A DNA stretch of 64,000 bases from Podarcis gaigeae (lineage: Eukaryota): assembly GCA_964106915.2 (NCBI GenBank), contig OZ066922.1; one strand, given 5' to 3'. The position numbers and the translations under genes were made by a program. Positions 31,642 to 55,419 of the stretch are shown here, piece by piece. How positions within the stretch are numbered: the first letter of the stretch is position 1; the number at the start of each line of letters is the position of its first letter. The notes beneath the pieces are model-generated. The model had not been told where the DNA came from and ran no database searches. It saw only the letters and a list, made by a program, of their open reading frames with translations.

Positions 31642-31773
31642 NNNNNNNNNNNNNNNNNNNNNNNNNNNNNNNNNNNNNNNNNNNNNNNNNNNNNNNNNNN
31701 NNNNNNNNNNNNNNNNNNNNNNNNNNNNNNNNNNNNNNNNNNNNNNNNNNNNNNNNNNNNNNNNNNNNNNNNN
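31642..31773. other. Assembly gap (132 N)
   Basis: N run. Confidence 1.
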
Positions 31774-39590: not shown

Positions 39591-39737
39591 CTCCTTCATT
39601 GTCCTTGCTATCAGTACATAAAGTTTCCATGGCGACATCACATCCTGCTCCCCTCCATCCTGGCTGACAAACACAGTGCCAGCCATTTTGGTCCAGAGTA
39701 CATCTTCCATTGCTATTACACAAGCCAGGGCATCCCT
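39591..39737 (-). CDS. TENM3: Teneurin-3 exon, EGF8 ([13 protein letters not shown]...DSKDNEG); 147 nt
   Basis: TTTTGACAG acceptor, G|GTAGGA donor. Confidence 0.96.
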
Positions 39738-40342
39738 CTGTCAAAACAGACAAAAAAAATGACACTGCATGTGATTTAGCTATTACAACAATTTAAAATG
39801 TAATCAAAATACGAACAGGGGACACTTACTGGGAACAGGCCTTCAGAACAGCACAAATACTGTAATTGCACATGGAGAGTAGCAGCAACATTACCTGGGA
39901 TTCTAATTCTTAACTAAGTGGCATCTTTGATTGGTCTGACACTTGAGACACCACTTACCTGTGCAGGCAGGAAATATATCCAAGAAACCTCTAAATACCT
40001 GCAGGCCAGACAAAATTATGTTTTCCTGTTCTTTATCAGAGTAGCAGGCAATATGACCACAACATAATACACAACACAGCCTCTAGGCAAAACAACAGGG
40101 GTTCTGCATTTATAGAGGAAATAATTATTTGATGTATATGCGTTGCTGGTTACTTGATGGTATAGATTTCGTTAAGCTCCTTGTTATTTTAAATAAATCC
40201 TTGGAAATTTCAAAGTAGCTGTGCCACTCTGCTTTCAACAACGTTAATTTTATCTGGTCTCAAGAGTTGCCATGTGTTCATGTGAAATTACAGTGCATTA
40301 AATAATTGCACAAAGTATAGGTCAGTTTCAGTGACTATACTT

Positions 40343-40610
40343 NNNNNNNNNNNNNNNNNNNNNNNNNNNNNNNNNNNNNNNNNNNNNNNNNNNNNNNNNN
40401 NNNNNNNNNNNNNNNNNNNNNNNNNNNNNNNNNNNNNNNNNNNNNNNNNNNNNNNNNNNNNNNNNNNNNNNNNNNNNNNNNNNNNNNNNNNNNNNNNNNN
40501 NNNNNNNNNNNNNNNNNNNNNNNNNNNNNNNNNNNNNNNNNNNNNNNNNNNNNNNNNNNNNNNNNNNNNNNNNNNNNNNNNNNNNNNNNNNNNNNNNNNN
40601 NNNNNNNNNN
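40343..40610. other. Assembly gap (268 N)
   Basis: N run. Confidence 1.
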
Positions 40611-40647
40611 TTTTGTGACAATCTCCCTAAGGCTTTTGTGCTGTTAC

Positions 40648-40668
40648 CTTTATATCCTATCTTGTCTG
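40648..40668 (-). CDS. TENM3: Teneurin-3 alternative micro-exon (A)DKIGYK, 21 or 18 nt via AAGCAG tandem acceptor
   Basis: AAAAG|CAG|ACAAGATAGGATATAAAG|GTAACA; in frame; matches the second site-A insert I recall from mammalian Ten3. Confidence 0.85.
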
Positions 40669-40837
40669 CTTTTATGGCCAAGGAGGGAAAATTTGGGAAA
40701 CAATTAAAATTATTTAATATATCCAAAATCTATTACTTTTTTTTCATCTAACAGTACATCAAAAACAGTATCTGTCACTTCCTACTGATGGAAAAACTGG
40801 CATGCAGCCAACATGACCTGTATGAGAATGACAACAG

Positions 40838-40897
40838 TATATATCTATATAGATATATATAGATATAGATATATAGATATATAAATGTATATATATG
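40838..40897. repeat. AT-rich (ATATAG)n-like microsatellite
   Basis: Direct reading. Confidence 0.85.
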
Positions 40898-42609: not shown

Positions 42610-42636
42610 CTTTAACTATCTTATCCAAATAGTGAG
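42610..42636 (-). CDS. TENM3: Teneurin-3 alternative micro-exon, splice site A (AHYLDKIVK), 27 nt
   Basis: Long pyrimidine tract + AAG acceptor, G|GTACTG donor; peptide is the known Ten3 EGF7/8 insert. Confidence 0.93.
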
Positions 42637-44320: not shown

Positions 44321-46582
44321 TACTAGTACCTAGATGACGCCGGCAGGAAGCACACCTGACCATTGCTTCCAATTGGTACACGGCAATAAAACCAGAAATG
44401 TTCCCAGATTTTTTGCTGCAGCAGATAAACATGGCTACCCCTGTGCAATTTACAATAGCTACATGCAGAATGAAAGATTTGAACCAGACTATACAGAAAG
44501 ATAAAAGTTATGTGTCATGTACATCTGTACTGATGGCTCCATGTGTCCATACCATTAGTGGCTCAGTGTATGCACTGAATAGGAAGGAAGAATAAAATGG
44601 AATCGTACAGGACCCAGTGTGGAACATAGGGACGTCTGTGAGCAAGACACAGATAGAAAGTGAAAAAGGAAACCATGCATTTGGGAGGTGAATTTAAGGA
44701 AAGATGTGGGAAGGTGGAAGGGAGGAGAAAAACAGCATGGGTACTTCCAGGATGGTGTTCATTAGGGAATGAGTGTTCATGCACACAAATTTTTCAGTGT
44801 CCACATGATATCATTGGTGTATCATTTCATTTAGATTTATCCTTTCCACATAAAATCTAGTAAGTTAAAAGAACCTGTTGCCAACAACCTGCGTGTGTGA
44901 GATATCTGAGCAACCTGTTGGCAATGTTAAGTCCCCCATTGGGAAACATTCTAGTATAGAGGTAGCTTGCTGAAGGGAATATGTGAAATGGAAGACTAGG
45001 GTGGGATTTAACGGGGGAATCTTACAGCATTTATAGAGCTAACTGGTGAGTAGGTAACAGAGAGGAGTATCTGGACTGGAGAAAAGGTTAGGTTAGATAG
45101 AGGAGGTGGAAGGAAAAGATGTGTAAGAAAAGTCATTAAGTTGTGTTTGAAGACAATCGTACAAAAGGGTTGGAAGGAGTGCGATGGGAGATGGGGAATA
45201 AAGACTAGAAAGGAAGATAATACAATGCAATCATCATCTGCCAATTGGCTTCTCTCTCCTCGTTTGCCATGCCTAGGGTCTGTCAGGAGCTCCAGTATTA
45301 GAAATGGGGGAGAGGAAATGAAAACCATGGCCAAAGGCATTGCAACCAATATTCCAAAACTTACTGTTTGCTCAGAGCAGACCCTCTGAAATTAATAGAC
45401 CTAATTTAGTCGTGTTCATTAATATCAGTGGGTCTATTCTGAGTAAAACTTAGTTGAATACCACCCTTACAATAATTAACATAAATTTGGTGGAAGTACT
45501 GTATAAATATAGCTAATACTGTACATAAATAACAGCTCCATACCAAAATAAATACTCAGAGAACAGAAAAGCAAAACTAGACTTGGTGCGTAACAAACTT
45601 GAATCCCATTTATTTCCTGAGAAAAATGATGCTTGTGGGAGGGTGATGTGCAATGGAAAAGAGACAGAGCAGTTAAACACATTTCTGTAACTCTGGTGTG
45701 GAAATAGCTCAAGGTAGTTTGATATTGAGCTGAGAAGCAGGCAGAGAAAGGATTATGTAGTGCCTGTTACTTCTCCACTCTGTATCATTTCCTCCTAGAT
45801 GAAATTTTACTATAAAAATATAGTTGCTTTGCTAGCAAAAGCTCAGATCTTCGAAAAATATGAGCATCTCTCACCCCCCCAAAAAACCCCTGAATCTCAC
45901 AGCTTCTTAAGAAAATCTCTCAGATGACAATGGTGGAAATAAGACAAATTTTGAATTATATAATTTGTTGGCTTAGTACTATTAAGAAATTTGACAATAA
46001 TTGTGGGAGGGCATAGTGGGAATACATTAGGATTCACATAAGATTACTTAAAAGATTTCTAATAGCTTCTGTAATCAACTAATGTAAGGAACATCAACAA
46101 ACTGCAGAGTGAAAACAAGCATAGCAACAAGAAGAAAAATTATTCATCTCCATTGTAATTTTTCCAGCAATAAACTATTAAAGCTAGCAGGAAAATTCCC
46201 ATTTACTATTATGGTTTTTTTTAACAACAGGTCTTAATGCAGGCTTTCTAAAATTTAATGCTTTTCATTAGTCTTCCATTAGAGATATAAGTAGGTATCC
46301 CCCTTAGATTATTCATATGCTAGCTCCTGTAGATATGACAGAATAGCTACAGCCTGCAAAAAAGTATATATTAAATCCATTTATTCCAATCATCTCCTGT
46401 TTAAATCAGCATGAACAGCATGCTCAGTGATTTGATGTTCCTTAATTGGTACTCACTGCACTGTTTTATTACTGATTACCCTGTCATAAAGGATTATAGC
46501 AGTGACATAATTTTCAATGCAGTATAACAAATTCATATTCATATTAGTTTATTCGTGCCCTTTACAAGATATTTTCACTTAC

Positions 46583-46603
46583 CATGATCTTTCTTGTCTA
46601 GGG
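46583..46603 (-). CDS. TENM3: Candidate alternative micro-exon (A)LDKKDH, 21 nt, phase 1->1
   Basis: TATTTTTCTTTTTTATTCTAG|CCCTAGACAAGAAAGATCATG|GTAAGTG; frame-preserving, no stop; no transcript evidence available. Confidence 0.55.
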
Positions 46604-47649
46604 CTAGAATAAAAAAGAAAAATACTAACTATCCTGTTTTGCGCACAGCTTTTCAACATGACTGTAAGCTAAGATGTCATGCTAGGGGTAAAATAATTGA
46701 CCAGGTATTAAAAATACCTCCCTACCACTTAAAATGAAATTTAAATAAAACTTGCAGGCAAAGCTGCGACACAAATTCCAATGGCTAATTCCATGAAACA
46801 CAAGCTGGTGAATTCATACTCAGATTTGGGCACAATGACTGATGCACTGGAGAAATTTCATAATTTTTAGCCTTGAAAACTTACAAAGGTTGTTATGCTC
46901 ACTGTGCTATGAATATTCTTGGTGATGTTTTGGCAGTAGTTATCACCAGATGTAATTTAGTACCAGAAATCTACTGCATGATACAAGATTGGGTAGAGAA
47001 GGAACAAGTAACAGGAGACTCCTGAGTATATTTCAGCTACCTCAAAATCACTTAAGGTCCCACCTCTCTAATATTTGAAACTGAATTTCCTCCTTTGGTT
47101 CCAAAGGGGACCCAAAGCCTTATCCTGGTCCTCTGAAACACTCCCCCACCCCAAACCTCTCTAACATATTTTGCTCCACCAATATCAGAGCTCCAACATT
47201 GCTAGGGCCACAGATGTTGCTACAGATGTGGAGAGGGAGCTATGTTGGCTCTCCAATCATGGAGTTATCTACATGATGTATTCTACGACCCCAGGTCAAA
47301 GGATTGCAGTCCTAGGAGATAAAAAGAATACCAGACACAGAGATTACTCTTAGAGATGGATTTTAGTGCTAACTAGTAAATACGGTCATACCTTGGAAGT
47401 CGAATGGAATCCATTCTGGAAGTCTGTTAGACTTCCAAAATGTTCAGAAACCAAAGCACGGATTCTGATTGGCTGCAGGAGCGTCCTGCAGCCAATCGGA
47501 AGTCACACCAGACATTCGGCTTCCGAAAATTGTTCAAAAACCGGAACACTCACTTCCAGTTACAGATAGGTAGCCGTGTTGGTCTGCCATAGTCAAAACA
47601 AAAAAAATTCCTTCCAGTAGCACCTTAAAGACCAACTAAGTTAGTTCTT

Positions 47650-47689
47650 GGTATGAGCTTTCGTGTGCATGCACGCTTCTTCAGATACC
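47650..47689 (-). ncRNA. Second hammerhead motif (TENM3-sense strand), one stem II mismatch
   Basis: Reverse complement reads GGTATCTGAAGAAGCGTGCATGCACACGAAAGCTCATACC. Confidence 0.65.
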
Positions 47690-47700
47690 TGAAGGAACAA

Positions 47701-47740
47701 GGTATCTGAAGAAGTGTGCATGCACACGAAAGCTCATACC
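47701..47740 (+). ncRNA. Minimal type I hammerhead ribozyme motif
   Basis: GGTAT-CTGAAGA-A-GTGTG CATG CACAC-GAAA-GC-TC-ATACC: stem I, CUGANGA, stem II, GAAA, UH site. Confidence 0.75.
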
Positions 47741-50494
47741 AAGAACTAACTTAGTTGGTCTTTAAGGTGCTACTGGAAGGATTTTTTTTTTGTTTTGACT
47801 CACTTCCAGGTTTTGATCGTTTGGGAGCTGAATTGTTCGGGAGCCAAGGCGTTCAGGATCCAAGGTATGACTGTAAATGCTTAGGGTGACATGTGCTGCT
47901 GTGTGTGGTGGTAAGGATTTTGCTTTGTGATTGAAGGCAAATAGGCCAGCAAAGCTGTTTAGGGCTTGAGCATTAGTTTTGTGATGAAGCATTAAATAAA
48001 CCATTATTGAAAATTAATTACTATATTTCCTTTAATCTTGTGGTAGCCTTACAATTAATGCCATTTGGGACTTGACCAGAAAGGATGGAGGCAGTCTCCT
48101 TGTGATAGTTCTGCTTAATGCCCAAAGAGTCATGAAACCAATTATCATAAAGGAAGGAAAAGAAAGAAAATAAGACAAGCTTTTCTCAAAAGAAACGTAG
48201 CAACCTGTTAAAACATTCAGAAAACTAGGAAGCTGATATCAGCATATCCTAACATGACTGCAGAGTAACTCTGTGGTAGAAAACTGTGCAAGTATGTAGC
48301 AGTAGCTACGCTTAGTTATGTGATCTTTCATAACCTCCACGCAGGCCTGAATTGAAACTATTTGTCTACATTAATTGTAATTAGTGTCACATTACTGTAA
48401 ATTCAGTCACATAATATCTTCAGTTTCACATGCAATACCTAATATTTTCAGAATTGACAGATGGTATTTCTGTTTTCCCAAGTCTTCTCTTTTATTATCA
48501 AAATACTGTCATTTTCTGAAGTGTTCAAAGTTCTGTGCTGACAGAGGCCTTTATTTCTTCCCACAGAGAATGCTTACTCTTCACTTTCTAATTCTGCAGA
48601 AGTAAGAATAATTCTGAATTTGAACCTACAATTGTAATAGATTGCACTTTTTCTTGCATAGCTTGTAGAGTGCCAGACCAGCTGTATTCTTTGAACATTT
48701 TGTCCTCTCGTATATCTATCAATTTCCTGTGCAATAGCTGCTACTAACTTCAATGTCTTCGCAGCACGTCTGCAATTTTAAAACTTACAAACTTCCTTCG
48801 TGCAGGCTTTTTTTAAAAAAACTACTTGTGTAAAGTTCTATGTTCCCCATTTAAATCTGGTAAGAGCATTTATGTTTTTATTGTAACATTTCAAATAGGA
48901 TTAGAGTAGACTTTGGACTACTTAACTGCTAATTAGCTATCAGTATGAAGGCAGCTAAGTGCTATTTATGTGCCTTGTTAAAACCATGTACAATCATATA
49001 TGTACATGGCTCCATGGCACAGAATTCCTGTCTTATTTATAGTGCCATTTAAAACAAGCTTTTAAAATCTCGCCATTACTCACACCATTTTTTGATGTTA
49101 ACGTGCAGGAGAACAAACTTCCAGCAGCTTCATCTAGCAAGATATATCTAGTAACAAACAATAGGCTGCTTGAGAAGCTACAGGTTCTGTTGCATTAGGC
49201 CTGAACCAGCAGTAGCTCCCTATTCTAAAATCTGTCTGTGCTTTCAGTTTCAAATAGTCTTCCCTGGAGCCATAACCTTCAAAAAGCCCCCTAGTCACCC
49301 AGCTTTGCCTTCTTGCCCCCACAGACTTGACAAGTACACAATCTCTGTACTTCCACGAGCCCAGCAATTCAGTACAAATAATCCTGACTTTGCCTCCCAA
49401 TTGATGGGAGGTGCAAAAAACAGGATTCAAGTAATCCAGACTAGTCTGCTACTAGATGTCTCCAACTGCTTTCTGCCTAGCTCCACAAATCCAAAGGTCA
49501 ATTCATTCTAAACAGCTTAGCCTTCTTGTAGGAAACAGAGAACTCAGGGAAGTCCCAGTTAACTATTCATGTCTCCTTAAGTTGTTTTTCCTCATACGCT
49601 GAGATGCATTCCACTAATGATATGCTTATTGCCCCCATCCATTTGAGACTAGGTTAAAATATACATGTCTCCCAGCCAGGTTAAAATATCACCAAAGCCT
49701 AACTCCATATCTTCTCTGAATGCTTAATGGTATACACTCGCATTTATACCACTTACTTTGAACCACATGAATATGTATATAAATATTAATTTTGGACAGA
49801 ACGATCACTGTTTCCACACCATAACAATTAAACAGCTGTAATGCCTCTCGTGAGCTAAGTGTTTGAGCTGCAGGCAAGTTCTTTAAACAGATGGTCTTAC
49901 TCACCCATATTTAACGTTACAGATTTATTTCAAAAGGGCTGTTGACAAATCAGAATGCAGCAGAATTTTAATGCAGGTTTTCTAATTTGCAATGTAAATT
50001 ACCTAACAATAATAATGTGTATAGAAAGAAAAAATTATGAAGCTTTTTAATTGGAGCCACTAATACAACACTTGAATATAGTAGATTCCTACCAACGTAA
50101 TTATTTGCTAATTCCATTCGACTAAATGCGTTTAATGGCAAAGCAGCTGGTGAAGCATTCACTTTTATAGTGTTCCTATCACAGTTATTTAATTTACCCA
50201 AGATAAGTGTCAGCTAAATTGCAAAAACAATAGCCTATCGCTAACAATCTCCCTTCCAACTTTACACTCTTGCTCAGTTGGGTGTGAATCAATGCAACTT
50301 ACATGGACCTAAAGTTAAGCACACAACTCTGCATTTAGTTATAAGCTGATCTCATTGATACTTCATCACATGTCCAATTGCATCCTATAATTATTTTAGA
50401 AGAGAACTTAATTTACTTTATTCTGAAATAGTCAGAGCTGGTCCACCCATTAGCCACAGTGAGACCTTTATCTCAGGCAGATGGAGAGGGCCTG

Positions 50495-53500: not shown

Positions 53501-55233
53501 GCAGCCAAACATCAAAGCACAAACAAACAAGAAAGTAGGCAGACTCCCGCTGTTCAGATATCTGAACCTGCAGAGTGTACAGCAAGGTTTGGACATAATT
53601 CTTTATATTCAGATAAGTTAATTTTTGCATAGCGAGTGGATAGCAGGACCTGCATGTGTAAGAAATTATAGTTTACTCTTGTAACATACATACATGCATG
53701 CATATATTACACAAGACAGCTTTTATGTGTCATTGTCATCAATAAATACACTCTAGCACCAATATTAAATGAATAAATTTGGTGTTCTATAAGTTTAAAA
53801 TTGGTAAATGGAATTTCAAAGTATACTTATAATAAAAGTAATCCATTAATCCATTTTGGCATAACTATTCTCATAGCTGCAGGCTGCAATTCTGTCCCCA
53901 TCAATTAGGGTTTAAAGAGATTGGTGAGACTGAAAGTTATTGGGAACCATGACTAGGTATAAGGGGAAACTGGATATATATGGGATTAGAACTGTTGTGG
54001 AATTAGTCAGTCATTGCAGGAAAATGGAAGCCCTACCCAAACCACTTGAATGTTTAAAAGCTTAACAAATATCCAAAACAATGAATGTATTATTGCAAAA
54101 GCAGTAATGCAATAAATACACGGGCAACGCATAGTTTTGAAATCTAGTCGAACCCCCTGCCTTCCCAATGCTGATGAAAGAAACCCTGTTGTGTCTAATC
54201 ATTGGAAAAAAATGTGCAAGAACAGTTCATCCATATATAATTGTAATCCATGTAGGTCGGTGAGGCCAACAGAAGAGTGATTTGCTGAATAATTACAAGC
54301 TGACAAGCTAAAGCTTAGTGATAGGGCTTTGTCTCCCACATTCATTTTACCATAGACTTTTAAAAGGAGCAGGAAATATGGAGACAAATGTGAAGGATCA
54401 CTATGAAAAGTCTTCCTTCATTTGTCCTCTTTGTGATCTTTAATGACTTATCATGGATCCAACTTAGTTAGATATCAAAGGTTATTTTGTCAAAGACTGG
54501 TTTCTGAAAAGAAACATAACAGAATTCTAAGAAAGAAAATTTTAAGAAAGAAAAAAGGCATCTTTCTTTTATATCCATATAATATGCAGGATGTAAAGGA
54601 AAAATGAGTCTTGTACTGCAAAAACATAGGGCCTCTGCTCTTGCTTGCAAAAAAACCAAACAAACCTATGAATGGAAGTGCTGAAAGTCAGCAAGTTGCT
54701 CAATTTGTCGAAACAGAAGCTTTGTGGAAATGTTAAATAATTCATTATGCCTGCTAACAAAACTCAACAAAAATTATTTCAGGGTGCTAGATTTCCTGGC
54801 AAACAAACCAGCTTTTATGTTCATGTACAATTCTTTAGTTTCCTTTGTTAATAAAGGTGAAATGAGATGCATGACTACAAGCTTAAAACAGAAAAGCTGG
54901 TAGAAATGAACTGATTTATCCATTGATTAGGAAGAATACTAAAATAGTTATCATTGGAGTCAGTGAACTTATGTGTAGAGAAAACCAAGAAAAAATTGAA
55001 TAGAGATTCTTGCCCCTTCCATCTGGGGTGAGATAAAGGATTGATGATCCATCATATAATCATTTCTTCTTCTTTTTTTAAAGTAACAATTTCTTTACAC
55101 AAACTGACAAGTGAAAATATTCCATTTGAAGAAACAGGCTTCAAAGTGCTAAATTTCTGATTCAGACAAGGTCAGGACCTCTGGCTTTTTAAGTTCAGTA
55201 TTGAAGAATAATATTAAAGCACAGTTAGCCTAC

Positions 55234-55419
55234 CAATGGTGCAGTGCTCGCCATTCCAGCCTTGGCTGCATTCACACTTCCCATCTTTACATGTTCCATG
55301 TTCAGCACACCGAGGGTGACATGCTCTCTGACTGCAGGATGGGCCAGTCCAGCCTTCTTCACAACGACAAGTTCCACCCATGCAGACACCATGTGTGCCA
55401 CAGTCAACAGAACAGATTT
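55234..55419 (-). CDS. TENM3: Teneurin-3 exon, EGF6-7 ([11 protein letters not shown]...GEHCTI); 186 nt
   Basis: TGCAG acceptor, G|GTAGGC donor; two EGF repeats. Confidence 0.96.

What the first reader, a model, noticed from the sequence alone, without database searches (positions are those of the whole stretch)
46583..46603. Candidate extra teneurin-3 micro-exon (ALDKKDH) at the EGF7/EGF8 adhesion-code splice site
Seen: on the minus strand a near-pure T tract + TAG, 21 nt (CCCTAGACAAGAAAGATCATG), then a consensus donor G|GTAAGT. It is symmetric phase 1 like its intron, has no stop, and an internal second AG gives a 15-nt version (DKKDH) that is also in frame. Known: inserts at this site in teneurin-3 alter dimer conformation and homophilic adhesion. 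Inference: this is a further site-A cassette upstream of AHYLDKIVK and (A)DKIGYK that would enlarge the isoform code. I do not recognise it from mammalian Ten3, but cannot exclude that it is annotated in reptile or bird models.
Basis: partly seen in the sequence, partly recalled or inferred. Interest (0 to 1): 0.8.

Follow-up and report, generated by a model that had tools for sequence, protein, structure and literature searches.

The report
Possible lizard-only extra teneurin-3 micro-exon
A 21-base stretch in a wall lizard's teneurin-3 gene looks like a usable extra mini-exon at the spot where splicing tunes neuronal adhesion, but a bird lacks it and no RNA data could be checked, so whether it is used is about even odds.

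Summary
On the minus strand, 46603-46583 is a 21-nt open, phase-1 unit. A 19-nt tract with 17 pyrimidines plus AG precedes it, and ATG|GTAAGT follows it. It lies in the teneurin-3 intron between the EGF7 exon and the AHYLDKIVK and ADKIGYK cassettes.

On rough splice matrices both sites beat nearly all 15 real exons in the window. Chance would give such a pair in this intron, strand and frame with p about 0.0015-0.03. The peptide shares LDK with AHYLDKIVK (p about 0.005-0.01).

In a bird contig the two known cassettes and their splice sites are almost identical to the lizard's. The candidate has no pyrimidine tract and no AG or GT in register there, so it is not part of the ancient cassette set.

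The unit also sits inside a lizard-specific predicted hairpin (dG -23.1 kcal/mol, z -4.8) that pairs the acceptor and exon with the downstream intron. The 5' splice site lies in its loop. A 300-nt element conserved with the bird starts 32 nt downstream.

No squamate relative or full-length teneurin-3 model could be reached. I put about 0.45 on a young, lineage-restricted cassette and about 0.4 on an unused pseudo-exon. The scan holds this stretch only as this same note, not on other DNA.

The parts
46604..46625 (-). Pyrimidine tract plus acceptor AG of the candidate (gtatttttcttttttattctag). The last upstream AG is at -23/-22. There is no good yUnAy branch point at -18..-40. One UGC lies further upstream, at -42..-40 (window 46645-46643), outside these coordinates.
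   Evidence: sequence; rough acceptor score 9.4, rank 9 of 4284 AGs on the sense strand.
46583..46603 (-). Candidate 21-nt cassette, phase 1-1, encoding (A)LDKKDH. It is purine-rich (GACAAGAAAGA).
   Evidence: It shares LDK with AHYLDKIVK and GACAAGA with the ADKIGYK exon.
46583..46597 (-). Alternative 15-nt version from the second AG (DKKDH), also in frame.
   Evidence: acceptor score 6.3.
46577..46582 (-). Donor GTAAGT, preceded by ATG.
   Evidence: rough donor score 10.8, rank 6 of 3517 GTs on the sense strand.
46548..46613 (-). Predicted RNA hairpin of 22 bp in four helices. The 5' arm holds the end of the pyrimidine tract, the G of the acceptor AG and most of the exon. The apical loop GGUAA holds the 5' splice site. 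The 3' arm is intron +5..+35.
   Evidence: 71 nt, dG -23.1, z -4.84, 0 of 200 shuffles; 121 nt, dG -30.7, z -3.76. It ranks 4th of 629 windows in the interval. The bird orthologous stretch has z +0.5.
46255..46551 (-). Conserved non-coding element starting 32 nt downstream of the donor. It is rich in homeodomain-type motifs (TAATCC, CAATTAAG).
   Evidence: 79.8% identity over 297 nt to bird contig L004.
55234..55419 (-). EGF7 exon (upstream constitutive exon), ending ...GEHCTI + G.
42610..42636 (-). Known cassette A1, AHYLDKIVK (27 nt).
   Evidence: 26 of 27 nt plus both splice sites identical in the bird. Described in PMC11058771 and PMC5851990.
40648..40668 (-). Second cassette, (A)DKIGYK (21 nt).
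   Evidence: the exon plus about 100 nt of flanks is nearly 100% identical in the bird.
39591..39737 (-). EGF8 exon (downstream constitutive exon), starting (G)AG GGA TGC = EGC.

Best explanation
The unit is most likely a young cassette micro-exon of teneurin-3 site A, restricted to the lizard lineage and not shared with birds.

Mechanism (inferred). U2AF binds the long U-rich tract and the first AG. U1 binds the near-perfect ATG|GUAAGU. The purine-rich body (GACAAGAAAGA) acts as an exonic enhancer. Inclusion would add seven residues, ALDKKDH, or DKKDH from the second AG, to the EGF7-EGF8 linker. This could happen alone or ahead of AHYLDKIVK and/or ADKIGYK, because every junction keeps phase 1 and regenerates Ala or Glu.

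The predicted hairpin pairs the acceptor and exon with the downstream intron and leaves the 5' splice site in its loop. That would make inclusion conditional or low rather than constitutive.

Shown here: the anatomy, the signal strength, the reading frame, absence in a bird and the predicted fold. Inferred: use in mRNA, the effect on the protein, and the role of the hairpin.
For: Exact anatomy and frame. The context is teneurin-3 site A. Acceptor 9.4 and donor 10.8 compare with means of 5.0 and 7.2 for 15 real exons of the same gene; only 1 real acceptor and 2 real donors reach those values. It is the only such pair in 212 kb of strand sequence. The expected number in this intron, strand and frame is 0.0015 when both thresholds are required.

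A tripeptide shared with the known cassettes occurs in only 0.5-1% of random open hexapeptide windows. Its acceptor region is the one most similar to the A1 acceptor among 175 pyrimidine-rich AG sites. No repeat or transposon structure explains it.

The site tolerates and uses short inserts: A1 and the ADKIGYK cassette lie in the same intron (PMC11058771).
Against: No protein fragment with LDKKD or DKKDH was found among 110 fetched EGF7/EGF8 fragments, and no paper holds the peptide.

The unit is not conserved in a bird, where the orthologous stretch is about 65% identical and lacks the pyrimidine tract, the AG and the GT. A1 and the ADKIGYK cassette are nearly invariant there.

Under a summed-score criterion the unit is top but not a strong outlier: 20.2 against 19.3, 18.9 and 18.6, with about 1.3-1.8 such pairs expected per 212 kb. 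No good branch-point consensus lies at -18..-40 (read). A hairpin of -23 kcal/mol over the acceptor and exon would oppose recognition.

The splice matrices were written from memory and are approximate.
Confidence: 0.45

Rival explanations
1. It is an unused, or only trace-level, pseudo-exon. A local inverted duplication (template switch) of the 5' shoulder of the conserved element created, in one event, the end of the pyrimidine tract, the AGs, the 5' half of the 'exon' and the hairpin that masks them. The GTAAGT in the loop arose by a few substitutions. The frame and the LDK match are coincidence.
For: The 5' arm is 18 of 22 nt identical to the reverse complement of the 3' arm, read from the fold. 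The 3' arm and loop align without gaps at about 63% to the bird, so they are ancestral, whereas the 5' arm does not align. The bird has no exon there.

The summed-score tail predicts about one such pair per 200 kb. The interval holds about six hairpin loci. No transcript or protein evidence exists.
Against: A near-perfect donor within 9-60 nt of the new acceptor, the right frame, no stop and a tripeptide shared with the neighbouring cassette together have a joint chance of roughly 1e-5 to 1e-3. Both sites are stronger than those of almost all real exons of the gene. The upstream U-run extends beyond the hairpin arm.
Confidence: 0.4
2. It is the surviving copy of an ancient third site-A cassette, paralogous to AHYLDKIVK and ADKIGYK. 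Birds lost it; the lizard kept it, or it is decaying there.
For: All three cassettes share the pattern A-x(0-2)-(L)-D-K-[IK] and start with C after the phase-1 G. The acceptor region is the one most like A1's. The bird stretch is alignable at about 65%, as a decayed copy would be.
Against: No outgroup could be reached to set the polarity: the frog locus came without DNA and the sparrow locus is too short. The literature describes only inserts A and B (PMC11058771, bioRxiv 10.1101/2025.02.28.640769). The other two cassettes are ultra-conserved with long conserved flanks, whereas this one has none upstream.
Confidence: 0.1
3. It is a splicing helper rather than a coding cassette: a recursive-splice or decoy exon that helps to remove the 12.6-kb intron or tunes the choice of A1 and the ADKIGYK cassette.
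For: It has strong sites deep in an intron of a long neuronal gene.
Against: The acceptor is followed by CCCT, not GT. Joining ...ATTG to CCCT does not regenerate a 5' splice site, so the defining recursive motif is missing. No pairing between the conserved element and the A1 or ADKIGYK flanks beats shuffled controls.
Confidence: 0.05

Closest known systems
Teneurin-3 splice insert A (AHYLDKIVK, 27-nt exon between EGF7 and EGF8; PMC11058771, PMC5851990)
   Same: It lies in the same intron, on the same strand and in phase 1-1. It is of micro-exon size, starts with Ala from G|C.., contains LDK, has a purine-rich body, and has a similar U-rich acceptor ending in attct..ag.
   Different: A1 is 26 of 27 nt identical between lizard and bird, with conserved flanks, whereas the candidate is absent in the bird. 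The candidate lacks the Tyr and Ile that contact EGF8 and the ABD domain in A1 (bioRxiv 10.1101/2025.02.28.640769). It has much stronger splice sites and sits in a hairpin.
Second site-A cassette, ADKIGYK (21 nt), in the same intron
   Same: It has the same length, the same phase and an identical GACAAGA core. Both start A(x)DK.
   Different: The ADKIGYK exon and about 100 nt of flanks are nearly 100% identical in the bird, and it has a weak acceptor (score -1.3), as regulated micro-exons often do. The candidate shows the opposite pattern.
Intronic pseudo-exons (decoy splice-site pairs; own knowledge, Sun and Chasin type)
   Same: It lies deep in an intron, is not conserved in the one relative reached, and has no transcript support.
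   Different: Its signals rank in the top 0.2% on both sides. It is in frame in an intron already known for cassettes, which is rarer than chance predicts.
Structure-gated alternative exons (chicken beta-tropomyosin exon 6B, tau exon 10 stem-loop; own knowledge)
   Same: A local stem encloses the exon and a splice site, so recognition would depend on opening the stem.
   Different: The fold here is only a prediction for a single sequence. No covariation test is possible and no splicing data exist.
SRRM4-dependent neural micro-exons (PMC12626420 and papers cited there)
   Same: It is at most 27 nt long, lies in a synaptic adhesion gene, preserves the frame and would sit in a surface linker.
   Different: The only UGC lies far upstream (-42..-40). 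The upstream flank is not conserved.

Membership tests
Teneurin-3 site-A cassette exon | Lies in the intron between the EGF7 and EGF8 exons, on the coding strand | tested here: met
Teneurin-3 site-A cassette exon | Phase 1-1, length a multiple of 3, no stop, all junctions stay in frame | tested here: met
   Junction codons read: GCC, then GCT, GCA or GAG.
Teneurin-3 site-A cassette exon | Usable 3' and 5' splice signals | tested here: met
   with approximate matrices. The branch point is weak (read).
Teneurin-3 site-A cassette exon | Found spliced into mRNA | not testable with these tools
Teneurin-3 site-A cassette exon | Exon and splice sites conserved across amniotes, as for A1 and the ADKIGYK cassette | tested here: not met
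   Bird contig L004: A1 and the ADKIGYK cassette are kept, the candidate is absent. Squamates could not be reached.
Teneurin-3 site-A cassette exon | Present in predicted or annotated proteins | tested here: inconclusive
   No LDKKD or DKKDH in the fragments. Full-length teneurin-3 models could not be reached.
SRRM4-type neural micro-exon | Length 3-27 nt | tested here: met
   21 or 15 nt.
SRRM4-type neural micro-exon | UGC-containing enhancer close upstream of the 3' splice site | tested here: inconclusive
   There is a single UGC at -42..-40 and none nearer.
SRRM4-type neural micro-exon | Highly conserved flanking introns | tested here: not met
   The upstream flank cannot be aligned to the bird. 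The downstream conserved block starts only at +32, and the bird keeps it without the exon.
Unused pseudo-exon | Signals no better than the intronic background | tested here: not met
   It is the top pair of 2513 in 212 kb, with p 0.0015-0.03 for this intron, strand and frame.
Unused pseudo-exon | No conservation of the splice sites | tested here: met
   Bird only.
Recursive-splice exon | The acceptor is directly followed by a 5' splice site motif (AG|GURAGU), or the junction regenerates one | tested here: not met
   The sequence is AG|CCCUAG, and the junction ...AUUG|CCCU is not a donor.
Structure-gated alternative exon | A stable local stem encloses the exon or a splice site | tested here: met
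   (prediction only).
Structure-gated alternative exon | The stem is supported by covariation or by mutational tests | not testable with these tools
   No related squamate sequence was available. The bird has no stem.

The most novel reading that the evidence does not exclude
A squamate-specific third cassette of the teneurin-3 site-A adhesion code was born when the shoulder of a conserved intronic element was copied in inverted orientation. That single event created an acceptor, half an exon and a hairpin that gates the exon's own use. Together with the two ancient cassettes it would raise the site-A repertoire from 4 to 8 or more forms (up to 12 with the 15-nt version) in lizards.
Probability: 0.2. 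Interest if true: 0.6.

Novelty: new member of a known kind. Interest (0 to 1): 0.4.

Why it matters
Short inserts between EGF7 and EGF8 of teneurin-3 switch the shape of the dimer and decide which cells stick to each other (PMC11058771). A further in-frame cassette there, limited to one reptile lineage, would show that this splicing code for neuronal wiring is still evolving. It would also give a natural variant of linker length and charge to test in clustering and structural assays.

The likely birth route (an inverted duplication beside a conserved element) and the self-masking hairpin would be a neat case of how a new exon can arise already under restraint. If the unit is unused, the case is still useful as a warning. 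Even the best-looking splice-site pair in 200 kb, in frame at a known splicing hot spot, need not be an exon.

Tried and rejected
For that reason I ran no Rfam scan, DNA pattern scan or findings search by sequence on that stretch. I used it only in local reading, folding, translation and scripts.

2. Word search with the EGF7 exon. It returned 12 short fragments: one spliced Ten3 fragment without insert (P0005), one partial exon, and ten that read through from the exon into the intron.

3. The large representative search with the NHL exon. The only full-length vertebrate hit, P0014, proved to be human teneurin-1 once names were shown. I had used it once as a query before its origin was visible and not afterwards. 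That search listed only mammalian teneurin-1, so no full-length teneurin-3 isoforms were reached.

4. Word search with the bat teneurin-3 fragment P0005. It returned 98 fragments, none with LDKKD, DKKDH, DKIGY or HYLDK.

5. Other loci. The sparrow locus L001 ends before the conserved element next to the candidate, so it is uninformative. The frog locus came without DNA.

6. Transposon or repeat origin. No copies in the window, no terminal repeats, and the other hairpins are unrelated in sequence.

7. Long-range RNA pairing between the conserved element and the A1 or ADKIGYK flanks was no better than shuffled controls.

8. Recursive splicing is rejected because the motif is missing.

9. Papers. 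No hit for LDKKDH, ALDKKDH or DKIGYK. Berns et al. 2018 is not held.

Full report
**Observation.** The minus strand at 46603..46583 reads CCCTAGACAAGAAAGATCATG. It is preceded by tatttttcttttttattctag and followed by gtaagt. In phase 1 it encodes (A)LDKKDH without a stop. A second AG six bases in gives a 15-nt in-frame version.

The EGF7 exon is 55419..55234 and ends ...GEHCTI plus one G. The AHYLDKIVK exon is 42636..42610. The (A)DKIGYK exon is 40668..40648. The EGF8 exon starts at 39737. The EGF7 exon matches solved teneurin-3 at E 6.6e-49. The window carries at least 15 further exons of the gene on the minus strand. Earlier notes of the scan call this genome a wall lizard.

**Is it more than chance?** I scored all AG and GT sites with approximate position matrices written from memory, so the numbers serve only for ranking.
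- The candidate scores 9.4 (acceptor) and 10.8 (donor). A1 scores 6.3 and 4.6, and the ADKIGYK exon -1.3 and 7.1. Fifteen real exons of the gene average 5.0 and 7.2.
- It is the only pair 9-60 nt apart that reaches both values in 212 kb of strand sequence (the window plus two bird loci). With 21 such acceptors and 16 such donors, 0.0015 pairs are expected in this intron, strand and frame.
- A fairer control uses the summed score. The candidate is still top (20.2), but the next pairs are close (19.3, 18.9, 18.6). An exponential tail predicts 1.3-1.8 pairs of that strength per 212 kb, which puts p near 0.03.
- The peptide shares LDK with AHYLDKIVK. Only 0.5-1% of random open hexapeptide windows share any tripeptide with the two known cassettes.
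- Among 175 pyrimidine-rich AG sites, the one most like the candidate's acceptor region is the A1 acceptor.
- No repeat or transposon structure surrounds the unit.

**Conservation.** Squamate relatives could not be reached. Short protein fragments from the word search led to two bird loci.
- L001 is from the song sparrow.
- L002 to L004 are host DNA in a JGI metagenome contig. They align to the sparrow through the introns at 79%, so the source is a bird.

L004 covers the whole stretch from the EGF7 exon to just past the ADKIGYK exon. The AHYLDKIVK exon is 26 of 27 nt identical between lizard and bird, with both splice sites and about 40 nt of flank on each side. The ADKIGYK exon plus about 100 nt of flanks is almost 100% identical.

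Three intronic blocks are also conserved: 54314-54156, 50259-49766 and 46551-46255. The last block (79.8% over 297 nt) starts 32 nt downstream of the candidate's donor. The alignment decays across the candidate. The donor region and the 3' half of the unit align without gaps at about 63-65%. The bird reads ...gtgtgcaggtcacaaaaattatgatgggtggag..., with no pyrimidine tract and no AG or GT in register.

The candidate is therefore not part of the ancient, strongly constrained cassette set. It is either a gain on the lizard side or a loss on the bird side. Without an outgroup I cannot say which: the frog locus came without DNA and the sparrow locus is too short.

The unit sits in a predicted hairpin, 46613..46548.
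- The 5' arm holds the last seven bases of the pyrimidine tract, the G of the acceptor AG, and exon bases 1-4, 7-12 and 17-20.
- The apical loop GGUAA holds the 5' splice site.
- The 3' arm is intron +5 to +35, on the shoulder of the conserved block.

The 71-nt fold has dG -23.1 kcal/mol and z -4.84, and none of 200 shuffles folds as well. The 121-nt fold gives z -3.76. In a scan of the whole EGF7-EGF8 interval it ranks fourth of 629 windows. About six loci reach z of -4 or lower, and none is related to it in sequence. The orthologous bird stretch has no structure (z +0.5).

The 5' arm is 18 of 22 nt identical to the reverse complement of the 3' arm, which is ancestral. A local inverted duplication may therefore have created the acceptor, half the exon and the stem in one event. 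In that case these features are not independent evidence.

**Transcript and protein evidence.** There is none. 

None of the 110 EGF7/EGF8 fragments holds the peptide. The one full-length vertebrate representative turned out to be human teneurin-1, which I had used once before its name was shown and not again.

No paper holds LDKKDH. The structural literature speaks of only two small alternative exons, inserts A and B (PMC11058771; bioRxiv 10.1101/2025.02.28.640769).

**Reading.** Two explanations are nearly level.
- A young, lineage-restricted cassette (0.45). The strength of both sites, the frame, the purine-rich body and the site's known tolerance of inserts favour it. The hairpin would make its inclusion conditional.
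- An unused pseudo-exon born from an inverted duplication (0.4). The lack of conservation in the bird, the weak branch point, the masking stem, the summed-score control and the absence of any transcript or protein trace favour it.

A relic of an ancient third cassette (0.1) and a non-coding splicing helper (0.05) are less likely. The recursive-splice motif is absent, and no long-range pairing with the A1 or ADKIGYK flanks stands out.

If the unit is included, it would lengthen the EGF7-EGF8 linker by seven mostly charged residues. [quoted passage not shown] It lacks the Tyr and Ile of insert A that pack against EGF8 and the ABD domain (bioRxiv 10.1101/2025.02.28.640769). It would therefore probably not simply mimic A1.

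**Verdict.** If real, the unit is a new member of a known kind. The decisive tests are junction reads or RT-PCR in lizard neural tissue and an alignment across squamates and outgroups.

Noticed in passing
window 40611-40854 (minus strand; exon 40668-40648): The 21-nt (A)DKIGYK cassette and its flanks are about 90% identical to a bird over 249 nt, and nearly 100% over the central 120 nt. This is the most conserved stretch of the interval. Even so, the peptide string occurs in none of the 8 million papers searched, and the structural literature treats site A as a single insert.
   Followed up: partly
window 46255-46551: A 300-nt conserved non-coding element (79.8% to the bird) lies next to the candidate. 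It is rich in homeodomain-type motifs (TAATCC, CAATTAAG, TGATTGG). It is probably a transcriptional enhancer within TENM3, and the bird keeps it without the candidate exon.
   Followed up: partly
window 49766-50259 and 54156-54314: Two further intronic blocks are conserved between the lizard and two birds: 72-75% over about 500 nt, and 71% over about 165 nt.
   Followed up: no
window 40121-40342 and 39779-39913: The intron just upstream of the EGF8 exon is conserved with the bird (90% over 103 nt). The stretch nearest the exon reads through as a similar peptide (QLQYLCC..., ..GLFP.SVP..) in Logan contigs of several unidentified species. This fits regulatory sequence for the alternative region.
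   Followed up: no
window 47595-47795: There is a near-perfect fold-back: 96-nt arms, 96% complementary, 9-nt loop, z about -9.6 in my scan. It is the element another first-stage note calls a Penelope-like mini-element.
   Followed up: no
window 47400-47500, 45350-45460, 48950-49060, 44850-44960: Four more strong predicted hairpins lie in the same intron (dG -29 to -51 kcal/mol, z -5 to -8). They are unrelated in sequence to each other and to the candidate hairpin.
   Followed up: partly
window 40343-40610 and 31642-31773: There are runs of N (268 and 132 bases). The first lies between the ADKIGYK exon and the EGF8 exon. I left them untouched.
   Followed up: no
P0282: The fragment named 'Teneurin-3, partial [Galemys pyrenaicus]' differs from teneurin-3 at many EGF7/EGF8 positions (for example CSPGWNGEHC, NGNGRCTLDLNGW). 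It looks like another teneurin paralogue.
   Followed up: no
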